IMG/VR virus record: IMGVR_UViG_3300001460_000004
Coordinates: 124,001-188,000 of that record
Reading direction: 5' to 3' (one strand)
DNA: 64,000 bases
Below are positions 4,609-60,065 of the stretch, one piece after another. Made by a program: the position numbers and the translations under genes. The notes beneath the pieces were generated by a model. The model saw only the letters and a list, made by a program, of their open reading frames with translations, was not told the DNA's origin and did not search any database. The stretch's first letter is position 1. Every line of letters begins with the position of its first letter.

Positions 4609-5136
4609 GTGGATATTATGATTGATTTAGAGACAGCAGGAGTAGGCCCTGATGCTTGCATATTAACAATTGCTGCTCAAGTGTTTGATCCACTTAAAGT
4701 AACAAACTTTTCTGACCTACCATATGGTTACTGGCGTGTAGATATAGACAGCCAACCTGACCGACAAGTTGACCAATCCACGATTGAATGGTGGGCAACA
4801 CAGCCTAAGCATATACAAGACGAAGCATTTAGTGAAGGCGATCGTGTTAGTTTGTCGCAGGCATTAACTGAATTAGGAAAAATGATCTGGCATAGTACTC
4901 GCTTTTGGGCACAAGGTCCAACGTTTGATGCTACTATATTAGAACATGCATATAAAAGTAATGGGCAAAGTTTACCTTGGAAATTTTGGAGTGTTCGCGA
5001 CAGTCGAACTTTATTCAGTTTAGTTCCTAATTTGCCAAGTCATCCAGCCTCACACAATGCTTTAGAAGATTGTCGAAGGCAAGTTAACATGTTACATGAT
5101 GCTTTTAAAATTTTAAATATTAGAGAGATAAAATGA
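4609..5136 (+). CDS. DEDD 3'-5' exonuclease (DexA / Rv2179c-like)
   Basis: MIDLET (Exo I), GPTFD (Exo II), HNALED (Exo III). Confidence 0.85.
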   Translation: MDIMIDLETAGVGPDACILTIAAQVFDPLKVTNFSDLPYGYWRVDIDSQPDRQVDQSTIEWWATQPKHIQDEAFSEGDRVSLSQALTELGKMIWHSTRFWAQGPTFDATILEHAYKSNGQSLPWKFWSVRDSRTLFSLVPNLPSHPASHNALEDCRRQVNMLHDAFKILNIREIK

Positions 5137-6162: not shown

Positions 6163-9100
6163 ATGGCACTAGTATCACCAGGCGTAGAAGTTACTACAGT
6201 TGACGAATCGAATTATTTACCAGCAGCAACGAGTTCGGTTCCGTATATTCTTGTAGCAACAGCCGCAAACAAAGCTTCAGGTACAGATAGTACTGTGATA
6301 GCACCAGGAACCACATCAGCAAATGCTAATAAAGTTTACTTAGTCACAAGTCAAAGAGATTTGGCAGCGACTTTTGGTAATCCAACTTTTTACAACACTG
6401 CGAGTGGAACACCCTTAAACGGGTATGAATTAAATGAATACGGACTGTTAGCTGGATTTAGTTCGTTAGGTGTTAGTAATCGAGCTTATGTACAGCGAGC
6501 CAATATTGACTTAGCTCAATTAACTGCTACAACTGTACGCCCAGTAGGTGCTCCTGCAAATGGAACTTACTGGCTTGATACCGGAGCATCGCTTTGGGGT
6601 CTTAAGCAGTGGAATGCAGCTACATCAACTTTTACAGATAAAACACCAATTGTAATTACTAGTGCAACACAACTTAGTGGCGGCGTACCAGCTTCAAGTA
6701 TTGGAGCACAAGGCGATTATGCAGTTGTTGCAACAAATGCAAAGAATCCAATTTACTACAAAAACACATCAAATGCATGGGTGTTAGTAGGAAGTGACGC
6801 ATGGAAAAATAGTTGGCCAACATTAGTTGCTAGCAATGCTGTCACTGGTACACTTACAGCCGCAGACGTTATTATTATTAACGGAACTTCAGTAGCAGTG
6901 CCGGCTGCCGCAAATAATACATTAACTGGTCTAAAAGATGCAATTAATAGTGCTGCAATTACAGGTGTAACAGCAACCATAGACACAAGTAACAAACTTA
7001 CATTCTTTGTAGACAGTGATGCACAATCTGATGGTAGTAGTGCAGACGGTGGTATCATTAATATTGGTACTGGAAGTACAGCTGGATTGCTAACAACACT
7101 AGGATTAGAAGCAGGCGAAACACATAATTCCCCAGCTTTGCAGCAAAGTTACAACTACACAATTCCACGTTGGAGAACTACTGATAGTTCGCCTCGTCCT
7201 TCTGGATCAATTTGGAATATGTTGTCAGCAGTAAACAATGGCGCAGATCTCAGTGTTAAAAAATATAATTCAACTACAGCAGCTTTTACAGCACAAGATG
7301 TACCTTTGTATGCAAACGATCAATCTGCACTTAAAGCTCTTGATGCTACCAATGGTGGATCAGCTATTACAGTAGGATCGCTTTATGGACAGTACAATGT
7401 AGATCCTGAAGCAAATGCTATTTCACTTTACAACAATACCGCTACATTTAAAGTTTATGAAAGATATGCAACTGGTGCGTTAAACGTAACAGGTGATAAT
7501 ACAGCATCAGTTTTTGTAGCCGCAGAAGAATTTACAATTCAAGCAAGTGCTAAAAATAGCGACACATTATCAAGTGCGGTAACTGCCGTCCTTGGAGGAA
7601 CAACATCTGCAGACTTTGTTGCCGCAGTAAGTGCCGCAGGCGTAGCAAACGTAAGTGCAAGTGTAAGTGCCACTGGTGCAATTGTTATGACACATGATGA
7701 AGGTGGAGTTATTGTTCTTAAAGACACAACTGGTACTCCAGTTGCTGATGCAGGTTTTGCAACAACAATCACAACTGGTCAAGTTAAAGCAGGTACAGGC
7801 ACAGATACTGGTGCTCTTATCCTGAGTAACTGGATTGCACTAACTTATACAGCAAGTGCAAATGCCCCAAGTTTAGATCCAACAACTGGCACTAACTGGT
7901 ACTATAGCCCAGTTGATGAAGTAGACATTATGATTCAAAGTGGTGGAGCTTGGAAAGGTTATCAAACTGTATCACTAGACACACGTGGTATGAACCTTAC
8001 TAATACTAGTCCAAATGGACCAATTGTAAGTGCCAATGCACCGTCACAACAAAGTGATAAAACTGACCTAGTGTATGGTGATATTTGGATCGACACAAGT
8101 AACTTAGAAGAATATCCAGTAATTAAACGGTATTCTTCAGTTAACAATGTTGACACATGGGTAACAATATCAAATATAGATCAAACAACCGAAAATGGTA
8201 TACTATTTGCAGACGCACGTTGGGCTGGTAACGGTAATGTTGATCCAATTACAGATGACATTCCAACAGTCAAAAGTCTATTAACAAACAGCTATACTGA
8301 TGTAGATGCTCCAAACCCAGCACTATATCCTGAAGGTATGCTATTGTTCAATACACGTCGAAGTGGCTACAATGTTAAAACATACCAAACTAACTACTTT
8401 ATTCCAACTAGCTATACTTTTGCAACTTACGCAAGCACAACTGCTTATGTATCCGGCGATCGTGTAACCTATAACGGTGGAATTTATGTAGCAATTGCAA
8501 GTACAACTGGTAACGTACCAACTGATACTTCTTATTGGGCACTATTACAGCAAGCAGCTTGGGTAACAACTGCTGGTAATAAATCAGATGGATCTCCCTA
8601 CATGGGACGGTTAGCAGTTCGACAATTGGTTGTAGCAGCAATGAAATCAGCAATTGACACAAGTGATACATTGCGTGAAGAGCAGCTGGATTTTAATTTG
8701 TATGCAACACCAAACTATCCAGAACTAATTTCTAATATGGTTGCACTTAATAACGAGCGTGACAATACAGGATTTGTTATTGGCGATACACCAATGCGTA
8801 TGGCGCCTACTAGTGCTGATATACTTGCATGGTCAGGTAATACTACTGCTTGGAATACAGGCGACGGGCTTACAACAGCAAGTGAATTTATGGGTGTTTT
8901 CTATCCTTCCGGTCAAACAAACAACGTTGACGGAAAGATAGTTGTAGTACCTCCAAGTCATATGATGTTGCGTACTGTTATACGTAGTGACGATATTAGC
9001 TTTCCTTGGTTGGCACCAGCTGGATCCCGTCGAGGGCTAATTGATAATGCACTTGCAATTGGTTACATTAATGCTTCAACAGGAGAGTTTACTAAATTCT

Positions 9101-9564
9101 CAAATGGACAAGGCATTAGAGATACTTTGTATGAAAACAAAATTAACCCAATCACGTTTATTCCGGGTGCTGGATTGCAGAACTACGGTAACAAAACTGA
9201 AGCTGCAGCATCTAGTGCAATGGATAGAATCAACGTTGCACGACTTGTTGCATATATACGTGGAAGACTTGACTCGATTGCAAGTACATTCTTGTTTGAA
9301 CCAAATGATCAAATTACAAGAAATGAAATTTCAAATGCAATAAGTGGGTTGTTGAATGATCTAGTCGCTAAACGAGGAATTTATGATTACCTAGTTGTAT
9401 GTGACTTGTCAAACAATACACCGGCAAGAATTGATCGAAATGAGCTTTATGTAGATATTGCGATTGAACCGACTAAAGCAGTTGAATTTATCTACATTCC
9501 GGTTAGAATTAAAAACACAGGCGAATTAGCAGCAGGTAATGTTGCAACTTCGCAGACAGTTTAA
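6163..9564 (+). CDS. Contractile tail sheath protein (T4 gp18-like) with large insertions
   Basis: MALVSPGVEVTTVDES start; C-terminal WLAPAG..RG, LYENKINPI, RINVARL, FEPND, VCDLSNNTP, IEPTKAVEFI. Confidence 0.95.
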   Translation: MALVSPGVEVTTVDESNYLPAATSSVPYILVATAANKASGTDSTVIAPGTTSANANKVYLVTSQRDLAATFGNPTFYNTASGTPLNGYELNEYGLLAGFSSLGVSNRAYVQRANIDLAQLTATTVRPVGAPANGTYWLDTGASLWGLKQWNAATSTFTDKTPIVITSATQLSGGVPASSIGAQGDYAVVATNAKNPIYYKNTSNAWVLVGSDAWKNSWPTLVASNAVTGTLTAADVIIINGTSVAVPAAANNTLTGLKDAINSAAITGVTATIDTSNKLTFFVDSDAQSDGSSADGGIINIGTGSTAGLLTTLGLEAGETHNSPALQQSYNYTIPRWRTTDSSPRPSGSIWNMLSAVNNGADLSVKKYNSTTAAFTAQDVPLYANDQSALKALDATNGGSAITVGSLYGQYNVDPEANAISLYNNTATFKVYERYATGALNVTGDNTASVFVAAEEFTIQASAKNSDTLSSAVTAVLGGTTSADFVAAVSAAGVANVSASVSATGAIVMTHDEGGVIVLKDTTGTPVADAGFATTITTGQVKAGTGTDTGALILSNWIALTYTASANAPSLDPTTGTNWYYSPVDEVDIMIQSGGAWKGYQTVSLDTRGMNLTNTSPNGPIVSANAPSQQSDKTDLVYGDIWIDTSNLEEYPVIKRYSSVNNVDTWVTISNIDQTTENGILFADARWAGNGNVDPITDDIPTVKSLLTNSYTDVDAPNPALYPEGMLLFNTRRSGYNVKTYQTNYFIPTSYTFATYASTTAYVSGDRVTYNGGIYVAIASTTGNVPTDTSYWALLQQAAWVTTAGNKSDGSPYMGRLAVRQLVVAAMKSAIDTSDTLREEQLDFNLYATPNYPELISNMVALNNERDNTGFVIGDTPMRMAPTSADILAWSGNTTAWNTGDGLTTASEFMGVFYPSGQTNNVDGKIVVVPPSHMMLRTVIRSDDISFPWLAPAGSRRGLIDNALAIGYINASTGEFTKFSNGQGIRDTLYENKINPITFIPGAGLQNYGNKTEAAASSAMDRINVARLVAYIRGRLDSIASTFLFEPNDQITRNEISNAISGLLNDLVAKRGIYDYLVVCDLSNNTPARIDRNELYVDIAIEPTKAVEFIYIPVRIKNTGELAAGNVATSQTV

Positions 9565-11750: not shown

Positions 11751-12206
11751 ATGGCTAATAAATTCATACAAGGTGCCTACAAGCCTCTTAATCCTCAAAA
11801 GTATGTAGGAAAAGGAACCCCTAGATATCGTAGTGGCTGGGAATGGGCGTTCTTTCAATTTTGTGATACTAATGTTAGTGTTTTGGAATGGGCTAGTGAA
11901 GCTATTGCTATAAAATACAAACATCCTTTTACAGGAAAAATAACAAATTATATCCCAGATGTGTTTGTACGTTATCGCACTAAAAATAATAAAATTTGTA
12001 CAGAATTAGTTGAAATTAAACCCAAAAAACAAAGTGTACTTGAAGGTAAAATGAATGAAAAACAAAAAATAACTGTTGTTATTAATATGGCTAAGTGGGA
12101 AGCAGCAAGAGCCTGGTGTAAAAATGCAGGGATTGTTTTTAGAGTTATAACTGAAGAGCAGATGTTTCATAACGGAAATCCTAAAGCCAAGGCAAAAAGA
12201 CGTTAA
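11751..12206 (+). CDS. Head completion nuclease (T4 gp4-like, TnsA-type PD-(D/E)xK)
   Basis: PLNPQKYVG, YRSGWE, WASE, YIPD...VEIKP, KWEAARAWC...FRVITE. Confidence 0.9.
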   Translation: MANKFIQGAYKPLNPQKYVGKGTPRYRSGWEWAFFQFCDTNVSVLEWASEAIAIKYKHPFTGKITNYIPDVFVRYRTKNNKICTELVEIKPKKQSVLEGKMNEKQKITVVINMAKWEAARAWCKNAGIVFRVITEEQMFHNGNPKAKAKRR

Positions 12207-42954: not shown

Positions 42955-43737
42955 ATGTCAAAAAAAGTATTAGTAACTGGCTGTAGTATGACCCGAGGGC
43001 ATGGATTACGCAATGAACAAGACGATAAATGTCTATGGGTCAATGCATTGTTACCTAACTGTATAATTAACAATTATGCAGTTGATGGTGCAAACAACTA
43101 TAGTATTTTTATGCAAACTCTTGCACACTTACGACAAAACTATTATGATGTAGTATTAGTTGGCTGGAGTGCAATACCTCGTTGGTGTTTTAATGTTGGA
43201 CTTGAATTGTATCAAACACACACTGTACTTAGAGATGACGGACACAGTATAAACACAAACGACGGTGGACATTTTACTAGCAAATGGTTAGGCGAAACTG
43301 GTGACCGACTACGTAAAATACAAAACGATCACTGGGATCTATTAGACTTAGTTGCATTTGTGAATGTAATACGTGACATTCAAGTTACAATGAGAGGTGG
43401 TAAACTTGTATTTGTTAACACCCTTGGGCCATGGCCCAGTGAATACTTTGAAAGAAAAAACATTTCATTACCAGACGAACTAGACGAATTTGAAAAAGTC
43501 ATGTATAATATAAACAATAGAGATGATGAAGAAATATTAACCTTGTACAATAAAGTTCACGACGACTACAAATACAATGGCGGAATTCGTAGTGAATTGT
43601 GGTTGAACTTGTACAACAGTTTAGCATCTCTACAACAAGACACGGTAAGTGCAGAAGATTTACATCCTGGGTATGCTAGCCAAGCACATTATACTGATGC
43701 TTTTAAAAATAAAATTGATCGGATGATTGCAGAATGA
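42955..43737 (+). CDS. SGNH/GDSL-like protein
   Basis: TGCSMTRG (block I), NYAVDGANN (block II), DLHPG (block V). Confidence 0.65.
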   Translation: MSKKVLVTGCSMTRGHGLRNEQDDKCLWVNALLPNCIINNYAVDGANNYSIFMQTLAHLRQNYYDVVLVGWSAIPRWCFNVGLELYQTHTVLRDDGHSINTNDGGHFTSKWLGETGDRLRKIQNDHWDLLDLVAFVNVIRDIQVTMRGGKLVFVNTLGPWPSEYFERKNISLPDELDEFEKVMYNINNRDDEEILTLYNKVHDDYKYNGGIRSELWLNLYNSLASLQQDTVSAEDLHPGYASQAHYTDAFKNKIDRMIAE

Positions 43738-45200
43738 AACAAGCAACTCTCATAGTACGAGACGAAGTTAATATTAAATTTGAAGGCTTAGATTTAGATA
43801 CTCGCAAAAAACTGCATGCTAAATTTAAATTTCCTGTACCTTATGCAAGATATTTACCAGCAGTTAAACTTGGACGATGGGATGGCAAGATTGCATTTTT
43901 TCAAATGGGAGGTAGTAGCTATGTAAACTTATTGCCACAAATACTTCCGATGGTAGTTGACGAAGGATATGACATAGAATTAAGTGACCTGCGTGAATAT
44001 ACAACCACATTTGATTTTGACAAAGTAACGAGTAATTCATTTGCACATATCAAATGGCCAGAAAAACATCCAGCTGCTGGCGAAAGTATAACATTACGTG
44101 ATTATCAAGTTGAAATAGTTAATAAGTTTTTAGAAAACCCACAATGTTTACAGGAAATTGCAACCGGCGCAGGTAAAACTATTATGACTGCGGCACTGAG
44201 TCAACGCATTGAATCATATGGACGTAGTATTGTTATTGTTCCCAATAAAAGTTTAGTAACACAAACTGAAAAAGATTACATCAACATGGGATTGGATGTG
44301 GGTGTATTTTTTGGTGACAGAAAAGAATTTGGTAAAACACATACAATTTGTACTTGGCAAAGTTTGAATATACTGTTAAAGAATACAAAAAGTTTTGAAG
44401 CCGAAGTTACAATACAAGATTTTTTAGAAGATGTTGTTTGTGTTATAGTTGATGAAGTACATATGGCTAAAGCAGACGCACTAAAAACACTATTAACTGG
44501 TGTAATGAGTCAAATACCTATACGTTGGGGATTAACAGGAACAATACCCAAGGAAGCATTTGAATTTGAAGCATTACATGTAAGTATAGGCCCAGTTGAA
44601 AGTCAACTGAGTGCTAGTGAATTACAAGAGAGAGGTGTATTGGCAAATTGCCATGTGAATATTGTACAATTAATTGACCAGGTAGAATATAATAATTATC
44701 AAAGTGAATTAAAATACTTATTGGAAGAAACAGGTAGACTGGATACTATAAGCGAACTTGTTAGTCGAGTTAACTTAACTGGAAATACATTAGTATTAGT
44801 TGATAGAATTAGTGCAGGCACAGCATTACAACAAAGATTGCCTGACAGTGTTTTTATTAGTGGTGGTACTAAATCAGGTGAAAGGCAAGATGAGTATGAT
44901 GAAGTGGCTACTGCCCAAGGTAAAATTATTATTGCCACTTATGGGGTGGCTGCTGTGGGGATTAATATTCCCCGTATCTTTAATTTGGTTTTGTTGGAAC
45001 CTGGAAAAAGTTTTGTTCGAGTTATCCAAAGTATCGGGCGTGGGATAAGAAAAGCAGAGGACAAAGATCATGTGCAAATATGGGATATCACTAGTACATG
45101 TAAATACGCCAAACGACATTTAACAAAAAGAAAAACATTTTACAAAGAGGCAAATTATCCCTTTAGTATTGAAAAATTAGATTGGATGAAAATTAAATGA
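43734..45200 (+). CDS. uvsW: SF2 DNA helicase (UvsW-like)
   Basis: LRDYQ, ATGAGKT, DEVH, GLTGT, QSIGRGIR. Confidence 0.9.
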   Translation: MKQATLIVRDEVNIKFEGLDLDTRKKLHAKFKFPVPYARYLPAVKLGRWDGKIAFFQMGGSSYVNLLPQILPMVVDEGYDIELSDLREYTTTFDFDKVTSNSFAHIKWPEKHPAAGESITLRDYQVEIVNKFLENPQCLQEIATGAGKTIMTAALSQRIESYGRSIVIVPNKSLVTQTEKDYINMGLDVGVFFGDRKEFGKTHTICTWQSLNILLKNTKSFEAEVTIQDFLEDVVCVIVDEVHMAKADALKTLLTGVMSQIPIRWGLTGTIPKEAFEFEALHVSIGPVESQLSASELQERGVLANCHVNIVQLIDQVEYNNYQSELKYLLEETGRLDTISELVSRVNLTGNTLVLVDRISAGTALQQRLPDSVFISGGTKSGERQDEYDEVATAQGKIIIATYGVAAVGINIPRIFNLVLLEPGKSFVRVIQSIGRGIRKAEDKDHVQIWDITSTCKYAKRHLTKRKTFYKEANYPFSIEKLDWMKIK

Positions 45201-49180: not shown

Positions 49181-49744
49181 ATGGATATTGATATTGACTT
49201 TGCAGATCGTAAACATGTTTTAGATAGTCTAAAACATGTGCCAGCAAGAATGGACACTGTAAAAGGAGTGCGTAATCACAATAGTGGTGTGTACTTTACT
49301 GAAATTCCATATGATAGTAAACATCAATGTGCTAGTATTGATTATGAAACTGCCGAAGAACGTGGGTATTTTAAAATTGATTTTTTAAATATGCATGTAT
49401 ACAATTTAATTAAAGATACTAATCATTACACAGCAATGCAAAACGCACAAGTACCGTGGGAACGATTATGGGAAGATGTTGAATTTGCTCAACTGTTGGT
49501 TCATGTTGGTAATCATACCAACTTGTTGCAATCAATGCGTCCGGACAGTATAACTAGAATGGCTGCATTTATAAGTGTAATACGCCCTGGTAAAGCACAT
49601 TTACAAAATAAACCCTGGGATCAAGTCTTTGACAGTGTATTTGACGGTGACAACAGCAAAGGGTTTATCTTTAAAAAGAGTCATGCAATCAGTTATGCAG
49701 CTTTGGTAGCATTGCATATGAATTTAATCCACTTTGCGGACTAG
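49181..49744 (+). CDS. Miniature DnaE-like (family C DNA polymerase) catalytic core
   Basis: DIDID, HNSGVY, KIDFL, IRPG, FKKSHAISY in the same order as the DnaE palm/fingers motifs. Confidence 0.8.
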   Translation: MDIDIDFADRKHVLDSLKHVPARMDTVKGVRNHNSGVYFTEIPYDSKHQCASIDYETAEERGYFKIDFLNMHVYNLIKDTNHYTAMQNAQVPWERLWEDVEFAQLLVHVGNHTNLLQSMRPDSITRMAAFISVIRPGKAHLQNKPWDQVFDSVFDGDNSKGFIFKKSHAISYAALVALHMNLIHFAD

Positions 49745-50101
49745 CATAATACTACGGCGCCTACCTTTGTTACGTTGTATATTCTTTAAACTACACACAG
49801 GACCATGAATTATTTGTAGATGTTTGTTGCTAAAAGTTTTTAAACAAAACTTAAATGGTTCCCAATCCTTCTTTAAAAACAAGTTTATTGGTATACTTCG
49901 ATTGCTCTCCCACCACCATTGATGTGCTAATTCTAAGTATTCTTCCTTGAGTCCTCTTTCGATTACATCACCAAAGTCATATATGCTTGTTAGCGTATCG
50001 CCTCGATTTTGTATTACGCCTATGTGTTCATTTCCCACATAGTCGACAAGGCTCAAGAAGGGGTAATTTTGGTTTAGTTTGTTAAAGACATTGTTTACCA
50101 T
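49724..50101 (-). CDS. Hypothetical protein
   Basis: 125-aa ORF (YPFLS...WWWESNRSIPINLF). Confidence 0.7.
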   Translation of the reverse strand: MVNNVFNKLNQNYPFLSLVDYVGNEHIGVIQNRGDTLTSIYDFGDVIERGLKEEYLELAHQWWWESNRSIPINLFLKKDWEPFKFCLKTFSNKHLQIIHGPVCSLKNIQRNKGRRRSIMLVRKVD

Positions 50102-50903: not shown

Positions 50904-51607
50904 TGAAAAAAATTGTAAGTTTTGGAGATAGCTATGTTTGGGGCGATGAATTAATTGATCCTAAATTAGCAACACAACCTGATGCACATCCAGTGTTGAT
51001 TGAAAATACCAAATACAGAGAACAAAACTGTTATACGGGTTTGTTGGCCAACAGCTATGGTATTCCATACGAAAACTTTGGAATACCAGGTGGAAGTTTA
51101 CAAAGCACAGTTTGGACATATCTTTGGTGGCTTGATAATGAAAAACTACCCATTGAAGATTGTTTAGTTCTAGTTGGACTTACTGAACCTGGTAGGCACA
51201 GTTTTTATAATCCAAAGCATCGTGTGTATCCAAATGATACAGATTGGAATCGTTTTGTACACAGTAGCTGGATACATAGTAACAATAGCAGTGACAATGA
51301 ACAGTGGCATGAACTTGTTAAGTTACACACAGTATTGACAGATTGTCAAGCGTTAAGAGATCTAACACTACATACCACTCAATTGTTTTTTGAAAACACA
51401 CAACATTCACATCCTGTGGTACAATTTTTTACATTGAATCACACAGCTACTAAACCATACTCCACATTGTGGAATTCTACACAAAGCCTACGTGACTTAA
51501 CCCTGTCACCAAAATTACAAAAACCAAATGGTCATCCCAACGAAATTGGACATAAAATTATAAAAGAAGTCTTGCAAGAATACATATACCGTGCTATACT
51601 AAGTTAA
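50903..51607 (+). CDS. SGNH/GDSL-like protein
   Basis: FGDSYVWG, NFGIPGGS, GHPNEIGH. Confidence 0.7.
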   Translation: MKKIVSFGDSYVWGDELIDPKLATQPDAHPVLIENTKYREQNCYTGLLANSYGIPYENFGIPGGSLQSTVWTYLWWLDNEKLPIEDCLVLVGLTEPGRHSFYNPKHRVYPNDTDWNRFVHSSWIHSNNSSDNEQWHELVKLHTVLTDCQALRDLTLHTTQLFFENTQHSHPVVQFFTLNHTATKPYSTLWNSTQSLRDLTLSPKLQKPNGHPNEIGHKIIKEVLQEYIYRAILS

Positions 51608-52560
51608 TGTTAAATGCAATTGAATTATTTCCAACTGGTAAACAAACCAGTAGTGGCTGGTACAGCTACAATGCTCCTTGTTGTGTACACAATGGAGAAA
51701 ATGCCGATCGACGCAAGCGTGGTGGACTAAAGCCACGTGACAATGGTTGGAGTTATCATTGTTTTAATTGTGGATATACTGCTAGTTTTACAATTGGTAG
51801 ACAAGTAAGTTTTAAAGCAAGACGCTTACTGTCCTGGTTTGGTGTTGATAGTTCTGATATTGATAGATTAAATTTAGAAAGTCTACGCCAACGCAGTTTA
51901 TTGGATGCAATTGATCAACAACCCAAACGTAAAATAACATTTGATTTTGCAGAAAAACAATTGCCAGATGGGTGCTCTAACCCAACAGAACAAACAAATG
52001 AATACATAATTAATCGTGGCATACATCAAGTGGGTTTTCCTTTTTTAAGTTATAAAAGAGGACCAAGACTTGGTATTGTAACTCCGTTTACGTACAACGA
52101 CACGATAGTAGGAAGTAGTATACGTTTCCTAGATGATCGTATACCTAAGTATATTAACGATAAACCACAAGGATATGTTTTTGGTATAGATTTGCAACGT
52201 AATAACTGGGAACATGTATTTGTAGTTGAAGGTGTATTTGATGCGTTGTCAATACAAGGTGTTGCTGTGTTACATGACGATGTAAATGATGCACAAGCTG
52301 AACTCATCAACAATTTAAGACGTAGTGTAACAGTAATACCTGACCAAGACAACGCAGGTGTAAAACTAATAGACCGTGCAGTTGAACTAGGTTGGGCTGT
52401 AAGTATACCAAAGTGGCCCAACAACGATATCAAAGACGTAAATGACGCAGTTGTAAAATATGGAATGACAGCAACAATGATTTTTATAATGCAAGCACGT
52501 AATACAAGTAAAATTAAAATTGAATTAGCAAAAAAAGCATTGGTTAGGAAGTTAAAATGA
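51607..52560 (+). CDS. DNA primase (zinc finger + TOPRIM; gp61-like)
   Basis: PCC...YHCFNC, PKY, VEGVFDA, PDQD, KDVND. Confidence 0.9.
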   Translation: MLNAIELFPTGKQTSSGWYSYNAPCCVHNGENADRRKRGGLKPRDNGWSYHCFNCGYTASFTIGRQVSFKARRLLSWFGVDSSDIDRLNLESLRQRSLLDAIDQQPKRKITFDFAEKQLPDGCSNPTEQTNEYIINRGIHQVGFPFLSYKRGPRLGIVTPFTYNDTIVGSSIRFLDDRIPKYINDKPQGYVFGIDLQRNNWEHVFVVEGVFDALSIQGVAVLHDDVNDAQAELINNLRRSVTVIPDQDNAGVKLIDRAVELGWAVSIPKWPNNDIKDVNDAVVKYGMTATMIFIMQARNTSKIKIELAKKALVRKLK

Positions 52561-52588: not shown

Positions 52589-53977
52589 ATGCTTAAAGAA
52601 TACAATCTCGATGTACAGAAATTGTTTTTAGAAATGATGTTAGAAGATGCACAAAGTTATGTGCGTATTCAAAACATATTCAATCCAGAAAACTTTGATC
52701 GAAGCTTGATCGAAGTAGCTAAGTTCATTAAAGATCATTGTGATGATTACAAAACAATGCCAGAGATAGCTCAGATAAACTCCAGCACTGGCGTGACACT
52801 AAGTCCAGTACCTGATCTCAACAGTGGACACTTTGAATGGTTTATGACCGAGTTTGAAAACTTTACTAAAAGACAAGAACTTGAACGAGCAATACTAAAA
52901 GCTGCAGACTTATTAGAAAAAGGTACGTATGAGCCAGTTGAAAAACTTATCAAAGATGCAGTACAAATAAGTTTGACACGTGATTTAGGAATAAATTATT
53001 TTGATGATCCACGTGCCAGGCTAACTGCTTTAAAAAACAACAATGGTCAAAACAGCACAGGCTGGAAAGCACTTGATAAAATGTTGTATGGTGGGTTTAA
53101 CAGAGGCGAACTACAAATATTTGCAGGCGGATCGGGCTCGGGCAAGAGTTTGGTTATGCAAAATTTAGCAGTTAACTGGATACAAGCAGGACTCAATGGT
53201 GTGTACATTACACTAGAATTAAGTGAAGGCTTAACTGCAATGCGTGTTGATAGCATGTTAACGGGCACCAGTAGCAAAGACATTTTTCGAGAGTTAGATA
53301 ATGTTGAAATGAAAATTAAAATGGCTGGCAAAGCAAGTGGGCAACTACAAGTCAAGTACATGCCAGCACAAAGCAATGTAAATGACATTAGGGCGTATTT
53401 AAAAGAATTAGAAATACAAAGTGGTTACAAAACAGACTTTTTGTTAGTTGACTATCTAGACTTATTGATGCCGGTTAGTGCAAAAGTTAGCCCAAATGAT
53501 CAATTTATTAAAGACAAGTATGTAAGCGAAGAACTACGCAATTTAGCAAAAGAGTTAAATGTATTGTTTGTAACAGCATCGCAATTAAATCGTAGTGCAG
53601 TTGAAGAAATTGAATTCGACCACAGTCATATTGCTGGTGGTATTAGTAAAATTAATACAGCAGATAATGTGTTTGGTATATTTACTAGCAGGGCAATGCG
53701 TGAACGTGGGCGATATCAGATACAAGCAATGAAAACACGTAGTAGTAGTGGAGTTGGACAAAAAATTGATTTAGATTTTGATATAGCTAGTTTAAGAATT
53801 ATGGATTGCGATGAAGATGCACAGCAAAGCAGTAGCGGGCATGGTAACATATACGAAAGCATTAAAGCAACAACAAATGTTAACGACACAAGTAGTCCAG
53901 TTACCGAAACTCGAAAAGTTGAAGCAGATGTGCAAAGTAGTAAACTTAAAGGCTTGCTAGCATCAATGAAATCATGA
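52589..53977 (+). CDS. Replicative DnaB-like helicase (gp41-like)
   Basis: GGSGSGKS, TLEL, VDYLDL, TASQLNR, TADNV, KTR. Confidence 0.92.
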   Translation: MLKEYNLDVQKLFLEMMLEDAQSYVRIQNIFNPENFDRSLIEVAKFIKDHCDDYKTMPEIAQINSSTGVTLSPVPDLNSGHFEWFMTEFENFTKRQELERAILKAADLLEKGTYEPVEKLIKDAVQISLTRDLGINYFDDPRARLTALKNNNGQNSTGWKALDKMLYGGFNRGELQIFAGGSGSGKSLVMQNLAVNWIQAGLNGVYITLELSEGLTAMRVDSMLTGTSSKDIFRELDNVEMKIKMAGKASGQLQVKYMPAQSNVNDIRAYLKELEIQSGYKTDFLLVDYLDLLMPVSAKVSPNDQFIKDKYVSEELRNLAKELNVLFVTASQLNRSAVEEIEFDHSHIAGGISKINTADNVFGIFTSRAMRERGRYQIQAMKTRSSSGVGQKIDLDFDIASLRIMDCDEDAQQSSSGHGNIYESIKATTNVNDTSSPVTETRKVEADVQSSKLKGLLASMKS

Positions 53978-57293: not shown

Positions 57294-57551
57294 ATGCAGA
57301 GAAAGACTAAAAGCATACTTGAAGAATTAGATAGTATCTATAAAGATAAGTATGCCAATATTGACCGCCAACAAACTATTAACAATAGGGCAAATCATGT
57401 TATTGCTAGTGCAATTCGTCTTTTAGAAGATTTTGAAACTCATTATAATGATGAAGATGCTCAAAAATTGCAACGCAAATTGCTCAATGCTATTCGGACC
57501 AAAGAACAAACTAAATTTACAAACACAATGAGACGAGTAAATGTCAAGTAA
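57294..57551 (+). CDS. Small helical hypothetical late protein
   Basis: TAAATA and GAGG upstream. Confidence 0.7.
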   Translation: MQRKTKSILEELDSIYKDKYANIDRQQTINNRANHVIASAIRLLEDFETHYNDEDAQKLQRKLLNAIRTKEQTKFTNTMRRVNVK

Positions 57552-59454
57552 TATTCTTTTAACTGAAGGCGGTAATGTTTTTAAAGACCCTGAGGGCAAT
57601 ATTAAAACTCAGCGTATACAGCTTGCCGACATTGCCCCCACCATTAAATGGTTAGAAAACTTAACTGGATTACCATTAAGTGTTAACATGTTGGGAAGTA
57701 CCGGGCAAAAACCTTCTAGTGGTGATTTAGATTTAGCAGTTGATATTAACAAAGTCAGCAAAGAAGAACTTGACAAGACTCTTACAGATTGGCTTGTAAA
57801 GTCTGGCGTTGCTCCAGAAGATGTACATAAAAAACCCAATGGCTGGGTTATAAAGACTGGCATTAACGTACACTTCCTCACACCTATAGCCGGTAATCCT
57901 AAAAATGGTTATGTTCAAACTGATTTTATGTTTTTGCGTAAACCTGACTGGAGTAAGTTTATACTAACACAGGATCCCAACAGCGAATACAAAGGCGCAA
58001 GTCGTAATGTATTGTTAAACAGTATGGCTAAGAGCATGGGGTTGAAACTAAATCAAAATGATGGAATTATGTCACGTGAAGATAATAGACTTATTAGTGA
58101 TGATCCAGATGTTGTTGCAGAACTGTTACTAGGTAAGCCATACACTGCTCAAGACTTGATGAGTGTTGAAAAAATAATGAAAGCTCTCCAGAGTAATGGT
58201 AATCGAGACGCACTTATTGCTGATTGGCTAGCACATATGGAACGTCAAGGTACTCCATATCAAGGTGAAGTAAACGAAGATAACGAAGTAAGTTTAATGG
58301 CTAGGTTGCGTGATAGAATTATCAATCAAGGCATGAGTGTTATTACCGAAAACCCATATAATTTATATGTATTAAAAGAAGGAGCACGTATTGCACATCC
58401 TGAGGATCTAATATTTGACTTAGGTGCTGCAGGAGCAAACGATGCAATGCGGCAATTACAAGCTACTAGCGATAGTCCTACTAGTGCTACAGTTAAATGG
58501 GACGGAAAACCTGCAATTATTTTTGGTAGAGACGAAACTGGGCAGTTTATACTCACTGATAAGAGTGCATTTGTGGCAACTAAATATGATGGTATAGCAA
58601 AATCACCCAAACAGTTAGCACAAATAATGAATATGAGAAAAGGTGACAGGACTGATTTAAATAAAATGTATGCTAGTATATGGCCAAAAGTAGAAGCTAG
58701 TTTACCTCAAAACTTTAGAGGATTTGTAATGGCTGACTTGCTATACAGTAATACACCTCCTTTAAAAAATGGAAATTATATTTTTAAACCCAATACTGTA
58801 ACTTACAGTGTAAATGCAAATAGCGAATTGGGCAAACGTATTGCTGACAGTAGTGTAGGATTAGCAGTACACACTTACAAAAAAGGACCAGGTGACAGCG
58901 GAAGTCCTATACAAAGTTTAGATATAAATCCAGGTACAGGTGTTACCATATTTGGTAGCAAAGATGAAGGTATACAAAGTGCAAAATTAAATAGTGCATT
59001 ATACAAACAAACAGCCGGCATGATAAAACAACATACTTCTGGTATCAACACACTGTTTGCACCAGAGAATTTGAGAAGTAATAAAATAAGCAACTTACCC
59101 GAGCTTATGAAACAGTATGTTAATCACAGAGTACGCAGTGGGGGATTTAAAAACTTGCTCACAGATTTTGCCCCTTGGGTGCGAGCTAAAGCACCGACTA
59201 AAAGCGAACGTATACTTAAATGGGCAAATGAAAACGAAGCTGCATTCGTAGCCGTATTTGAGATATTTTTAAAGATAACCCAACTCAAAAATGATTTAGT
59301 TGCACAGTTTGATAAACAAACAAAAGACGTACAAGCAAGCTATGATACTGGTGATCGTGGCCATGAAGGGTATGTAGCAAACGATTTAAAATTTGTAGAT
59401 CGTTTTAAATTTAGTAGAGCAAACTTTGCACAAAATAATCCTGACTTAACATGA
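57541..59454 (+). CDS. Fusion of a Pol-beta-type nucleotidyltransferase and an ATP-dependent ligase-like domain
   Basis: LGS...GDLDL...QTDF; then KWDG, EGYV, LKFV (ligase motifs I, IV, V). Confidence 0.65.
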   Translation: MSSNILLTEGGNVFKDPEGNIKTQRIQLADIAPTIKWLENLTGLPLSVNMLGSTGQKPSSGDLDLAVDINKVSKEELDKTLTDWLVKSGVAPEDVHKKPNGWVIKTGINVHFLTPIAGNPKNGYVQTDFMFLRKPDWSKFILTQDPNSEYKGASRNVLLNSMAKSMGLKLNQNDGIMSREDNRLISDDPDVVAELLLGKPYTAQDLMSVEKIMKALQSNGNRDALIADWLAHMERQGTPYQGEVNEDNEVSLMARLRDRIINQGMSVITENPYNLYVLKEGARIAHPEDLIFDLGAAGANDAMRQLQATSDSPTSATVKWDGKPAIIFGRDETGQFILTDKSAFVATKYDGIAKSPKQLAQIMNMRKGDRTDLNKMYASIWPKVEASLPQNFRGFVMADLLYSNTPPLKNGNYIFKPNTVTYSVNANSELGKRIADSSVGLAVHTYKKGPGDSGSPIQSLDINPGTGVTIFGSKDEGIQSAKLNSALYKQTAGMIKQHTSGINTLFAPENLRSNKISNLPELMKQYVNHRVRSGGFKNLLTDFAPWVRAKAPTKSERILKWANENEAAFVAVFEIFLKITQLKNDLVAQFDKQTKDVQASYDTGDRGHEGYVANDLKFVDRFKFSRANFAQNNPDLT

Positions 59455-60065
59455 TACAATTAGACCGTAGCAGTCTTATTTTAACAACATATCGTACTGG
59501 AAGTACAGCCCTGTGTTCGCAACTGCAAGATAGTGGATACCACAATCACGACGAAGCATTTACGTGGGGTAAAAATGCATTTGATTTTACAGAAGCTGTT
59601 AGGAATATTGATTACAAATTTGTTGTTAAAGTTATGCCTGATCAACTCAACGATAGCATTATTGCATATCTTAATAGGTTAATTAAAACAAATCATGTAC
59701 AAGTAATTAGACTATATCGACGAGATATTGTTGCACAAATTGCTAGCATTTATATTGCAAAAAAAACAAAAAATTGGCATGTTACTGATAGAGAAGATAC
59801 AACTCAACAACAGATTGCAATTGATGATCGATTCTTAGCAGAAACAGTACACAACATGTTATCAATGTCATATAACTTAACACAATTGCCTATAGGTATT
59901 GATACACAATTAGTTTATGAAGATTTAGATTTATCTAACAGTCAGTACAAAGTAAATCCAAAACCCAATAACTACAATACAATATTAGATAAAATTCAAA
60001 CAATTATACATAATAATACAGATTTAACCAATCAATACAGTACATTTTACAGTTGGTATGAATAA
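59451..60065 (+). CDS. Stf0-like sulfotransferase
   Basis: TYRTGSTALC, RRDIVAQIAS, VYEDL. Confidence 0.75.
   Translation: MIQLDRSSLILTTYRTGSTALCSQLQDSGYHNHDEAFTWGKNAFDFTEAVRNIDYKFVVKVMPDQLNDSIIAYLNRLIKTNHVQVIRLYRRDIVAQIASIYIAKKTKNWHVTDREDTTQQQIAIDDRFLAETVHNMLSMSYNLTQLPIGIDTQLVYEDLDLSNSQYKVNPKPNNYNTILDKIQTIIHNNTDLTNQYSTFYSWYE

What the first reader, a model, noticed from the sequence alone, without database searches (positions are those of the whole stretch)
49181..49744. 187-aa minimal family C (DnaE-like) polymerase in a T4-type replisome
Seen: DIDID, HNSGVY, KIDFL, IRPG and FKKSHAISY occur in DnaE order, with the segments between them largely deleted rather than truncated from one end; the three catalytic Asp positions appear retained. 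Established: bacterial DnaE is over 1000 aa with PHP, thumb, clamp-binding and OB domains, and T4-like phages normally use a family B polymerase. Inference: either one subunit of a split polymerase or a repurposed minimal nucleotidyltransferase (priming, end-processing, DNA modification).
Basis: partly seen in the sequence, partly recalled or inferred. Interest (0 to 1): 0.8.

Follow-up and report, generated by a model that had tools for sequence, protein, structure and literature searches.

The report
C-terminal half of split mini-DnaE
This 187-residue phage protein is a real, strongly conserved, stripped-down piece of the bacterial replicative DNA polymerase (Pol III alpha); it is the metal-binding half of a two-gene "mini polymerase" already described by computation in T4-like jumbo phages in 2021, and nobody has yet shown what it does.

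Summary
The ORF at 49181-49744 and all five motifs are real. The homology to Pol III alpha (DnaE) is specific. A family profile hits only Pol III alpha chains in the PDB. A high-confidence AlphaFold model (pLDDT 96) matches only Pol III alpha by Foldseek. D2, D4 and D67 correspond to E. coli D401, D403 and D555, and H168 to the steric-gate H760. All are invariant in 79 relatives, and dN/dS is about 0.15.

It is not a complete polymerase and not a remnant. It starts exactly at the DxDxD strand and lacks the GS (triphosphate-binding) motif. That motif sits on a separate 174-aa protein with a Pfam DNA_pol3_alpha match. I found this gene about 78 kb downstream in the same phage genome, next to the clamp loader. 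Three natural fused forms of 375-376 aa exist.

Iyer et al. 2021 (Viruses 13:63) already described this split minimal Pol III alpha in group 2.2 jumbo phages. GenBank and PHROGs label both halves "DNA polymerase". The window carries a new marine member of a known, very abundant, biochemically untested family.

Most likely mechanism: a non-covalent N+C heterodimer acting as an accessory dNTP-using polymerase at the T4-type replication fork. This mechanism is inferred, not shown.

The parts
49181..49744 (+). Gene for the C-terminal (Mg2+-binding plus reduced fingers) half of the split minimal Pol III alpha; 187 aa
   Evidence: ORF; phrog_11778 'DNA polymerase' E=8e-50 over its full length; profile and fold matches only to Pol III alpha; 7991 cluster representatives with E<=0.001 among the 8000 candidates scored, those listed 184-204 aa
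49172..49177 (+). Shine-Dalgarno AGGTGA, 3 nt before the ATG. The protein therefore really starts one residue before the DxDxD strand
   Evidence: read from the sequence; homologues start at the same place
49184..49198 (+). Codons D2-I-D4-I-D6 = E. coli D401, D403 (catalytic) and D405 (DnaE-specific fourth Asp)
   Evidence: alignment to 2hnh 399-418; D2 and D4 invariant and D6 >=90% in 73 representatives; 79/79 in IMG/VR homologues; meaning of D401/D403/D405 from PMC3919608
49277..49294 (+). H33-N-S-G36-V-Y38 palm strand. It follows the DxDxD strand after 27 aa because the thumb domain is absent
   Evidence: H33 and G36 79/79; aligns with the HPSG strand of phage FADO DnaE; strand E29-38 in the model
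49373..49381 (+). K65-I-D67 = E. coli K553 and the third catalytic Asp D555
   Evidence: invariant
49583..49591 (+). R135-P136-G137 = E. coli RPG 639-641 (fingers)
   Evidence: R and P invariant
49670..49684 (+). F164-K-K-S167-H168 = E. coli F756-N-K758-S759-H760. H168 is the equivalent of the steric-gate histidine that excludes ribonucleotides
   Evidence: F164, K165 and H168 79/79; role of H760/S759 from PMC8485763
49724..50101 (-). Conserved convergent 125-aa gene of unknown function. Its 3' end overlaps the 3' end of the C-half gene by 21 nt
   Evidence: ORF; phrog_11637 E=8e-31; 37% and 33% identical to the genes in the same place and orientation in PA5oct and Sharanji
51607..52560 (+). 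DnaG/T4 gp61-type primase (Toprim), part of the conserved replication block around the C-half gene
   Evidence: Pfam Toprim_2/Toprim_3; 32% identical to the PA5oct 'DNA primase subunit' in the same position
52589..53977 (+). DnaB/T4 gp41-type replicative helicase
   Evidence: Pfam DnaB_C E=1.4e-19; 48% identical to the PA5oct neighbour
43734..45200 (+). UvsW-like SF2 helicase, upstream end of the conserved block
   Evidence: Pfam ResIII/DEAD/Helicase_C; 51% and 48% identical to the syntenic genes of PA5oct and Sharanji

Best explanation
The ORF encodes the C-terminal subunit of a two-gene, minimal C-family (DnaE-type) nucleotidyltransferase found in T4-related jumbo phages. This subunit carries four of the palm beta-strands with all three metal-binding aspartates (D2, D4, D67), the K65 equivalent of K553, and a reduced fingers module that ends in the helix bearing the steric-gate histidine (H168). 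The missing triphosphate-binding GS element (WGIGRGSS) is supplied by a separate 174-aa protein. That gene lies about 78 kb downstream on the same strand of the same genome, beside a gp31/GroES-like gene and the clamp loader. The two proteins most likely assemble non-covalently, with no intein, into one Pol-beta-like active site. The break falls in the loop that in E. coli alpha joins residues ~392 and ~399. The enzyme would add deoxynucleotides to a DNA or RNA-primed 3' end. It has no PHP domain, thumb, (HhH)2, clamp-binding motif or OB domain, so by itself it should be distributive. It probably works as an accessory polymerase beside the family B replicase, for example extending primers, filling gaps or repair, possibly held at the fork by other conserved small proteins. 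Shown here: the homology, the fold, the conservation, the split, the partner gene, the synteny and the natural fusions. Inferred: heterodimer formation, dNTP use, polymerase activity and the role at the fork.
For: Homology and fold are specific to Pol III alpha. The catalytic and steric-gate residues are invariant in 79/79 homologues; lengths are 184-194 aa; dN/dS median is 0.15 over 68 pairs.

The partner in this genome is L306:15651-16175. It has Pfam PF07733 E=2e-9 above the curated cut-off at residues 101-173, and phrog_11127 E=3e-44. It is linked to the window's contig through overlaps of 7.7-12.7 kb at 99.8-99.97% identity.

The N-half profile aligns to E. coli alpha 320-392 and the C-half starts at 399, so the two are exactly complementary. 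On phrog_405 the N-half covers 365-429 and the C-half 577-681. The split site is fixed: 80/80 environmental N-halves stop 29-37 aa after GxGRGS, 73 of them at exactly 35.

Co-occurrence in cultured phages: the C-half is in 96 records. The N-half is in 120 records, which also include full-length DnaE of Bacillus and Streptomyces phages. Counts per jumbo-phage host genus are near-identical.

Three natural fused proteins of 375-376 aa come from different sources. In P0189 the Pfam match runs across the junction. The N part of a fused form folds like the Pol III alpha palm (5lew, rmsd 3.6 A over 127 columns).

Both genes sit in replication blocks conserved from this marine phage to PA5oct and Sharanji. 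Iyer et al. 2021 reached the same reading.
Against: There is no biochemical or genetic data for any member of the family (searches found none). I could not model the N+C complex; the AF2 run on the fused form gave pTM 0.41 with the C part below pLDDT 50. About 100 residues of the DnaE fingers (E. coli ~641-739), the thumb and all DNA-clamping domains are missing, so it is not evident that the enzyme can hold a primer-template. PolB, which the 'accessory polymerase' idea presupposes, was not found in the ~150 kb of this genome that I read. The C-half alone does not reach any Pfam threshold.
Confidence: 0.7

Rival explanations
1. The N+C enzyme is an active nucleotidyltransferase, but not a template-copying polymerase. 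It would do something else with (deoxy)nucleotides, such as 3'-end tailing or terminal processing of the phage genome, a step in DNA modification, or synthesis of a small nucleotide product used against host defences.
For: It lacks the thumb, (HhH)2, clamp-binding and OB domains that hold DNA in every cellular C-family polymerase (PMC3919608). The Pol-beta-like fold is used by many non-polymerase transferases (general knowledge). These phages already have what a T4-type fork needs.
Against: The features retained are those specific to DnaE polymerases, not to generic Pol-beta-fold transferases: the fourth Asp D405, K553, the RPG motif and the steric-gate helix F-x-K-S/A-H. Both genes are embedded in replication blocks (primase/helicase, clamp loader), not in modification or defence islands.
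Confidence: 0.17
2. It is a pseudo-enzyme. In this view the folded palm/fingers remnant serves as a structural or regulatory replisome subunit, for instance an adaptor between primase-helicase and clamp loader, and catalysis has been lost.
For: The reduction is extreme and no activity has been shown. The model is a compact, confidently folded domain on its own.
Against: Pseudo-enzymes usually lose catalytic residues. Here D2, D4, D6, K65, D67 and H168 are invariant across relatives of 39% identity and upward (mostly 39-50%), and the GRGS motif is invariant in the five reference N-halves and present in all 80 environmental ones.
Confidence: 0.08
3. It is a decaying fragment of a once full-length phage dnaE gene, or the two halves are joined by a split intein as in cyanobacterial DnaE.
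For: The gene is short and begins in the middle of the palm domain. Full-length DnaE exists in other phages.
Against: There are thousands of homologues of the same length under purifying selection. No relative seen here has a full-length gene at this place. The start and the split site are fixed. The N-half ends at E. coli ~392 and the C-half begins at ~399 (M, then DxDxD), which leaves no room for intein halves.
Confidence: 0.02

Closest known systems
Split minimal DNA polymerase III alpha of group 2.2 jumbo phages (Iyer, Anantharaman, Krishnan, Burroughs, Aravind 2021, Viruses 13:63; PHROGs phrog_11778 = C-half, phrog_11127 = N-half; examples PA5oct EST35_0220 + EST35_0288, Sharanji WNN14606 + WNN14566)
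   Same: Same family. Full-length PHROG matches at E=8e-50 and 3e-44. The C-half is 41% and the N-half 46% identical to PA5oct. It has the same start at DxDxD, the same split site, and the same neighbours: the convergent 125-aa gene, primase and DnaB for the C-half; the GroES-like gene and clamp loader for the N-half.
   Different: This is a distant marine member from an uncultured ~325-kb phage with no nucleotide match in the phage collection. The halves are ~78 kb apart, against 30-44 kb in Sharanji, GAP32 and PA5oct and 182 kb in Atu_ph07. The fused 375-376-aa forms and the size of the family in metagenomes are not mentioned in the passages of that paper that I read.
Bacterial DnaE (Pol III alpha, C-family polymerase; E. 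coli 2HNH, Taq 2HPI, M. tuberculosis 5LEW)
   Same: Pol-beta-like palm with D401, D403, D555 and D405, K553, the RPG motif and the steric-gate helix, all in the same order. It is the only fold and profile match.
   Different: DnaE is a single chain of more than 1100 aa with PHP, thumb, full fingers, clamp-binding motif, (HhH)2, OB and tau-binding domains. Here the core is ~360 aa on two chains and all of those domains are absent. PHP and (HhH)2 are near-universal in cellular C-family enzymes (PMC3919608).
Intein-split DnaE of cyanobacteria (dnaE-n / dnaE-c joined by protein trans-splicing; from my own knowledge)
   Same: A C-family polymerase encoded by two distant genes.
   Different: The cyanobacterial protein is full length after splicing and each half carries an intein part. 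Here there is no sequence left over for an intein, so any assembly must be non-covalent.
DnaE3 of PolC-containing Firmicutes (primer-extending second polymerase; from my own knowledge and PMC3919608)
   Same: A DnaE-type enzyme that is never the sole replicase and works beside another replicative polymerase. This is a functional analogy for an accessory role next to PolB.
   Different: DnaE3 is full length. The analogy is a hypothesis and not a tested resemblance.
Split family B polymerase of chimalliviruses with a clamp-derived subunit (bioRxiv 2026, PMC13648687; title and abstract only)
   Same: It shows that jumbo phages do run multi-chain replicative polymerases.
   Different: It belongs to an unrelated polymerase family and a different phage group.

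Membership tests
C-family DNA polymerase (DnaE type) | Three catalytic aspartates of the Pol-beta-like palm (E. coli D401, D403, D555) | tested here: met
   D2, D4 and D67 align to them. They are invariant in 73 representatives and in 79 IMG/VR homologues.
C-family DNA polymerase (DnaE type) | Fourth conserved Asp (E. coli D405) that separates DnaE groups from PolC | tested here: met
   D6 is present in >=90% of representatives and 79/79 homologues. Feature taken from PMC3919608.
C-family DNA polymerase (DnaE type) | GS/triphosphate-binding element (GRGS, E. coli ~360-367) on the same polypeptide as the aspartates | tested here: not met
   It is absent from the 187-aa protein, which starts at E. 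coli ~400. It is present in trans on L306:15651-16175.
C-family DNA polymerase (DnaE type) | Fingers helix with the steric-gate histidine (E. coli S759-H760) | tested here: met
   S167-H168 align to it. H168 is 79/79 and position 167 is A or S. Role from PMC8485763.
C-family DNA polymerase (DnaE type) | N-terminal PHP domain | tested here: not met
   No Pfam hit on the C-half. The N-half matches only PF07733 at residues 101-173.
C-family DNA polymerase (DnaE type) | Thumb domain between the DxD strand and the HxxG strand | tested here: not met
   27 residues separate D6 from H33. In E. coli more than 100 residues lie between D405 and the K553/D555 block.
C-family DNA polymerase (DnaE type) | (HhH)2, clamp-binding motif and OB domain after the fingers | tested here: not met
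   The protein ends 19 residues after H168. The profile match ends at E. coli 767.
C-family DNA polymerase (DnaE type) | Template-directed DNA synthesis | not testable with these tools
   This needs reconstitution of the N+C pair and primer-extension assays.
Split minimal Pol III alpha of group 2.2 jumbo phages (Iyer et al. 2021) | ~190-aa protein covering the Mg2+-binding and template-binding part, beginning at DxDxD | tested here: met
   phrog_11778 over its full length, E=8e-50. Homologues are 184-216 aa with the same start.
Split minimal Pol III alpha of group 2.2 jumbo phages (Iyer et al. 2021) | Separate N-terminal NTP-binding half encoded at a distance in the same genome | tested here: met
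   A 174-aa gene lies ~78 kb downstream and is linked by overlapping contigs at >=99.8% identity.
Split minimal Pol III alpha of group 2.2 jumbo phages (Iyer et al. 2021) | Host genome is a T4-related jumbo myovirus with a PolB-based replisome | tested here: inconclusive
   T4-type terminase, sheath, gp13 and gp15, primase, DnaB, UvsW-like helicase and clamp loader are present, and the genome is ~325 kb. PolB was not found in window coordinates -8 to +142 kb. About 175 kb was not read.

The most novel reading that the evidence does not exclude
The two halves, together with the small proteins that are always encoded beside them, form a self-contained minimal C-family replicase module. The candidate partners are the ~78-80-aa helical protein translationally coupled to the N-half, the ~150-aa and ~200-290-aa neighbours, and the convergent 125-aa gene overlapping the C-half. 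In this reading these trans-acting subunits replace the thumb, the (HhH)2 domain and the clamp tether. The module would do a defined, essential job at the T4-type fork, such as taking over RNA primers from the primase before PolB. That would give the smallest known C-family polymerase core and a working model of how DnaE was built up from parts.
Probability: 0.2. Interest if true: 0.8.

Novelty: new member of a known kind. Interest (0 to 1): 0.4.

Why it matters
C-family polymerases are the hallmark bacterial replicases and have always been seen as very large multi-domain chains. A ~360-residue catalytic core split over two genes, kept under strong selection in thousands of environmental jumbo phages beside a family B replicase, bears on two questions. 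What is the minimum needed for C-family catalysis? Why does a phage with a full T4-type replisome keep a second, unrelated polymerase? The family is known only from sequence analysis, so any biochemical result would be new.

Tried and rejected
- **Pfam and single-sequence PDB searches on the C-half.** Neither gave anything useful. Only family profiles, PHROGs and the fold comparison see DnaE.
- **Partner inside the window.** It is not there. Regex, tblastn with the Sharanji N-half, and two HMMs run with all filters off over six-frame translations were all negative.
- **Short weak tblastn match.** The match at L011 14788-14835 is chance.
- **Fishing the partner out of IMG/VR.** The pattern would also have missed it, because this N-half has S-F where I required S-Y.
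- **How the partner was found.** Walking along overlapping metagenome contigs, in 8 look-ups.
- **PolB.** Not found with the Sharanji PolB fragment in the loci read by then, window coordinates -8 to +132 kb. One further hop, to about +142 kb, showed no polymerase-family gene among the called genes.
- **Model of the whole N+C enzyme.** MAFFT would not place N-halves and C-halves in separate blocks of one alignment, however I anchored them. I therefore folded the fused protein P0189 with an alignment that was deep only for the N part. The C part came out unfolded (pLDDT 52, pTM 0.41). Only the N part of that model is usable.
- **Intein trans-splicing.** Rejected on length accounting.
- **Decayed remnant.** Rejected on family size, length conservation and dN/dS.
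- **Literature.** I found no experimental work. The PA5oct omics paper gives no gene-level data for these two genes in its main text. The supplement of Iyer et al. is not held.

Full report
**1. The observation**

Window 49181..49744 (+) is an ATG-initiated ORF of 187 aa. An AGGTGA ribosome-binding site lies 3 nt upstream (sequence).

Pfam finds nothing. A single-sequence search of the PDB finds only noise. PHROGs places the whole protein in phrog_11778, annotated 'DNA polymerase' (E=8e-50). It also gives a weaker match to the 1190-position DnaE-type family phrog_405, at profile positions 577-681 (E=1.5e-5).

**2. Is the DnaE resemblance real?**

I aligned the protein with 72 full-length representatives taken from a search of 1.84 billion cluster representatives. 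That search returned 339 hits at E<=1e-3 and 194 at <=1e-10.

The profile of this alignment hits nine distinct PDB sequences. All nine are Pol III alpha: E. coli 2HNH at 1.5e-5, plus T. aquaticus and M. tuberculosis. The match falls into three collinear blocks:
- profile 3-20 = E. coli 399-418;
- profile 53-139 = E. coli 538-641;
- profile 150-177 = E. coli 739-767.

This fixes the residue correspondences:
- D2 = D401, D4 = D403, D6 = D405;
- K65 = K553, D67 = D555;
- R135-P136-G137 = RPG 639-641;
- F164-K-K-S167-H168 = F756-N-K758-S759-H760.

D401, D403 and D555 are the catalytic aspartates. D405 is the extra aspartate conserved in DnaE groups (Timinskas et al. 2014, PMC3919608). H760 is the proposed steric gate against ribonucleotides and is invariant in Pol III alpha (Vaisman et al. 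2021, PMC8485763).

The HNSGVY strand aligns with the H-P-S-G strand of a full-length phage DnaE in the same block as KxD. That alignment has weak statistics and I use it only for the correspondence.

An AlphaFold2 model built on the alignment is very confident (mean pLDDT 96, pTM 0.88). By Foldseek its 13 best PDB matches are all Pol III alpha (probability up to 1.00, 0.69 at the lowest; query TM-score 0.36-0.55, low because the targets carry large insertions). Everything after those is noise. In the viral structure library the top ~22 matches are mostly named phage DnaE-type polymerases; several carry no name.

One correction applies. Besides the internal deletions (the thumb, and about 100 residues of the fingers between E. 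coli 641 and 739), the protein is cut at both ends. It lacks everything before E. coli ~399 and after ~778.

**3. Not a remnant**

The 90%-identity protein collection returned 7991 cluster representatives with E<=0.001 among the 8000 candidates scored. Those listed are 184-204 aa. Full-length members at the 50% level are about 180-230 aa. Seventy-nine IMG/VR homologues are 184-194 aa.

In those 79, the following residues are invariant: D2, D4, D6, R10, H33, G36, P43, Y63, K65, D67, L69, N70, W93, I134, R135, P136, K138, F164, K165, H168 and Y172. For 68 pairs with dS between 0.05 and 1.5, Nei-Gojobori dN/dS has a median of 0.15, an interquartile range of 0.07-0.18 and a maximum of 0.41.

**4. 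What it is: one half of a split enzyme, already described**

Ninety-six phage records encode a homologue. All are jumbo myoviruses of the PA5oct, Rak2/121Q/PBECO4, GAP32 and Atu_ph07 type, at 36-41% identity in the rows listed (all records are below 60%). Several are annotated 'DNA polymerase' or 'DNA polymerase III alpha'.

Iyer et al. [quoted passage not shown] The window's ORF is the C-terminal one.

The N-terminal one in phage Sharanji is WNN14566, 172 aa, annotated DnaE. It ends about 35 residues after WGLGRGSS. A profile of five N-halves aligns to E. coli alpha 320-392 and M. tuberculosis 335-406. That ends just where the C-half begins.

In 80 environmental loci the N-half stops 29-37 residues after GxGRGS, and in 73 of them at exactly 35. 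The break point is therefore fixed. The N-half occurs in 120 phage records. These include full-length DnaE of Bacillus and Streptomyces phages, and the counts per jumbo-phage host genus are nearly the same as for the C-half.

**5. The partner in this genome**

The partner is not in the window. The window is 100% identical at this gene to IMG/VR UViG 3300001460_000004, a contig of 230,036 bp in which window position 1 corresponds to contig position 124,001.

I walked along overlapping metagenome contigs. At about window coordinate +127.2 kb, roughly 78 kb downstream and on the same strand, I found a 174-aa gene (L306:15651-16175). It ends in WGIGRGSS plus 29 further residues, so it stops 35 residues after GxGRGS.

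This gene matches Pfam PF07733 (DNA_pol3_alpha) at E=2e-9, which is 37.9 bits against a curated cut-off of 23.9, over residues 101-173. It also matches phrog_11127 at E=3e-44 and phrog_405 positions 365-429. It is 46% identical to the PA5oct N-half.

The contigs are tied together by overlaps of 7.7, 11.1 and 12.7 kb at 99.94, 99.97 and 99.81% identity. In one sample the genome lies on two contigs of 250,989 and 70,856 bp. It is therefore about 325 kb, and the 230-kb UViG is incomplete.

**6. Evidence that the two halves work together**

- They are complementary and collinear on DnaE, with the break in a loop.
- They co-occur in genomes.
- Three natural fused proteins exist: P0189 (375 aa), P0271 and P0272 (376 aa each). 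They share 78-81% identity and come from ENA and Logan assemblies. In them the N part runs through a ~10-residue linker into DFDID. The Pfam match in P0189 (residues 97-207) crosses the junction.
- The N part of a model of P0189 superposes on M. tuberculosis DnaE1 at 3.6 A over 127 columns.

No sequence is left over for intein halves, so any assembly must be non-covalent.

I could not obtain a model of the whole enzyme. MAFFT would not align the two kinds of half in one alignment. The run that was possible left the C part unfolded.

**7. Context**

Both genes sit in replication blocks that are conserved from this marine phage to PA5oct and Sharanji:
- C-half block: UvsW-like helicase, 167 aa, 151 aa, 224 aa, C-half, a convergent 125-aa gene (phrog_11637) overlapping its 3' end by 21 nt, then primase and DnaB-type helicase.
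- N-half block: a ~200-290-aa gene, a ~78-80-aa gene overlapping the N-half start, the N-half, a ~150-aa gene, a gp31/GroES-like gene and the clamp loader.

The window also holds a T4-type terminase and a tail sheath. I did not find PolB between window coordinates -8 and +142 kb. In Sharanji it lies 18 kb upstream of the C-half.

**8. Mechanism**

Shown here:
- a Pol-beta-like palm divided between two proteins;
- all metal ligands, K553, RPG and the steric-gate helix retained and invariant on the C-half;
- the GS element on the N-half;
- no PHP, thumb, (HhH)2, clamp-binding or OB domain.

Inferred: the halves form a heterodimer that adds deoxynucleotides to a primer 3' end. The conserved histidine argues for dNTP use. 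The enzyme should be poorly processive on its own. It would serve as an accessory polymerase beside PolB, for primer take-over, gap filling or repair, as Iyer et al. suggested. Some of the conserved small neighbours may be further subunits.

Rivals are a non-polymerase nucleotidyl transfer, a pseudo-enzyme, and a remnant or intein-split gene. The first cannot be excluded by sequence. The second is unlikely given the invariant catalytic residues. The third is refuted.

**9. Novelty and score**

The object is genuine and biologically odd. The kind is already published, although only from computation, and it is already labelled by PHROGs, PGAP-style annotation and several GenBank records.

- the partner gene and its linkage for an uncultured ~325-kb marine phage;
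- the exact residue map, including the steric gate;
- selection statistics;
- the fixed split site;
- the natural fusions;
- the conserved small neighbours.

I rate it a new member of a known kind, with interest 0.4.

Noticed in passing
window 49724-50101 (-): A 125-aa gene of unknown function (phrog_11637) converges on the C-half gene and overlaps its 3' end by 21 nt. The same arrangement, with 33-37% identical proteins, is kept in PA5oct and Sharanji. It may be a functional partner or a regulatory overlap.
   Followed up: partly
L306 14502-16667 (about window coordinate +126 to +128 kb): The N-half is always flanked by the same small genes. Upstream are a ~200-290-aa gene and a ~78-80-aa helical protein whose stop overlaps the N-half start (ATGA). 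Downstream is a ~150-aa gene. By phmmer, ours match 50/72, more than 24 of 75, and 67/75 of the corresponding neighbours in environmental loci. These are candidate accessory subunits.
   Followed up: partly
P0189, P0271, P0272; locus L305 1066-2193: Natural single-chain (fused) N+C mini Pol III alpha proteins of 375-376 aa, found on short metagenome contigs from two sources. The passages of Iyer et al. 2021 that I read do not mention them.
   Followed up: partly
window 4609-5136 (+): An Rv2179c-like 3'-5' exonuclease (PF16473). In 22 of 80 environmental relatives its homologue lies 2-4.4 kb downstream of the N-half gene. Here it sits between a radical-SAM gene and a dNMP kinase, next to the tail sheath.
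   Followed up: partly
window as a whole; loci L180-L185, L306, L307: The IMG/VR genome that matches the window (UViG 3300001460_000004, 230 kb) is incomplete. Overlapping contigs from other samples extend it to about 325 kb.
   Followed up: partly
window 6163-9564 (+): An unusually long tail sheath protein of 1133 aa, with weak matches to a carbohydrate-binding CBM_5_12 module and a flagellin 'IN' motif inserted before the sheath C-terminal domain.
   Followed up: no
window 11751-12206 (+): A 151-aa protein with a Tn7 TnsA-like N-terminal (endonuclease) domain, PF08722, inside the structural gene block. The Pfam hit is precomputed and was listed for the identical locus L178.
   Followed up: no
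L011, L184, L306, L307 (about window coordinates +93 to +142 kb): A large island of host-like metabolic genes: GAPDH, PEP carboxykinase, phosphoribosyltransferase, three radical-SAM proteins, TauD, NifU, two Fe-S assembly proteins, Fe-superoxide dismutase, NAD synthase, ferredoxin, an eIF-1A/IF1-like protein, a Vut_1 transporter and a TctA transporter.
   Followed up: no
window 57541-59454 (+) and 59451-60065 (+): A 637-aa DUF6267 protein followed by a 204-aa protein with a faint sulfotransferase hit. Function unknown.
   Followed up: no
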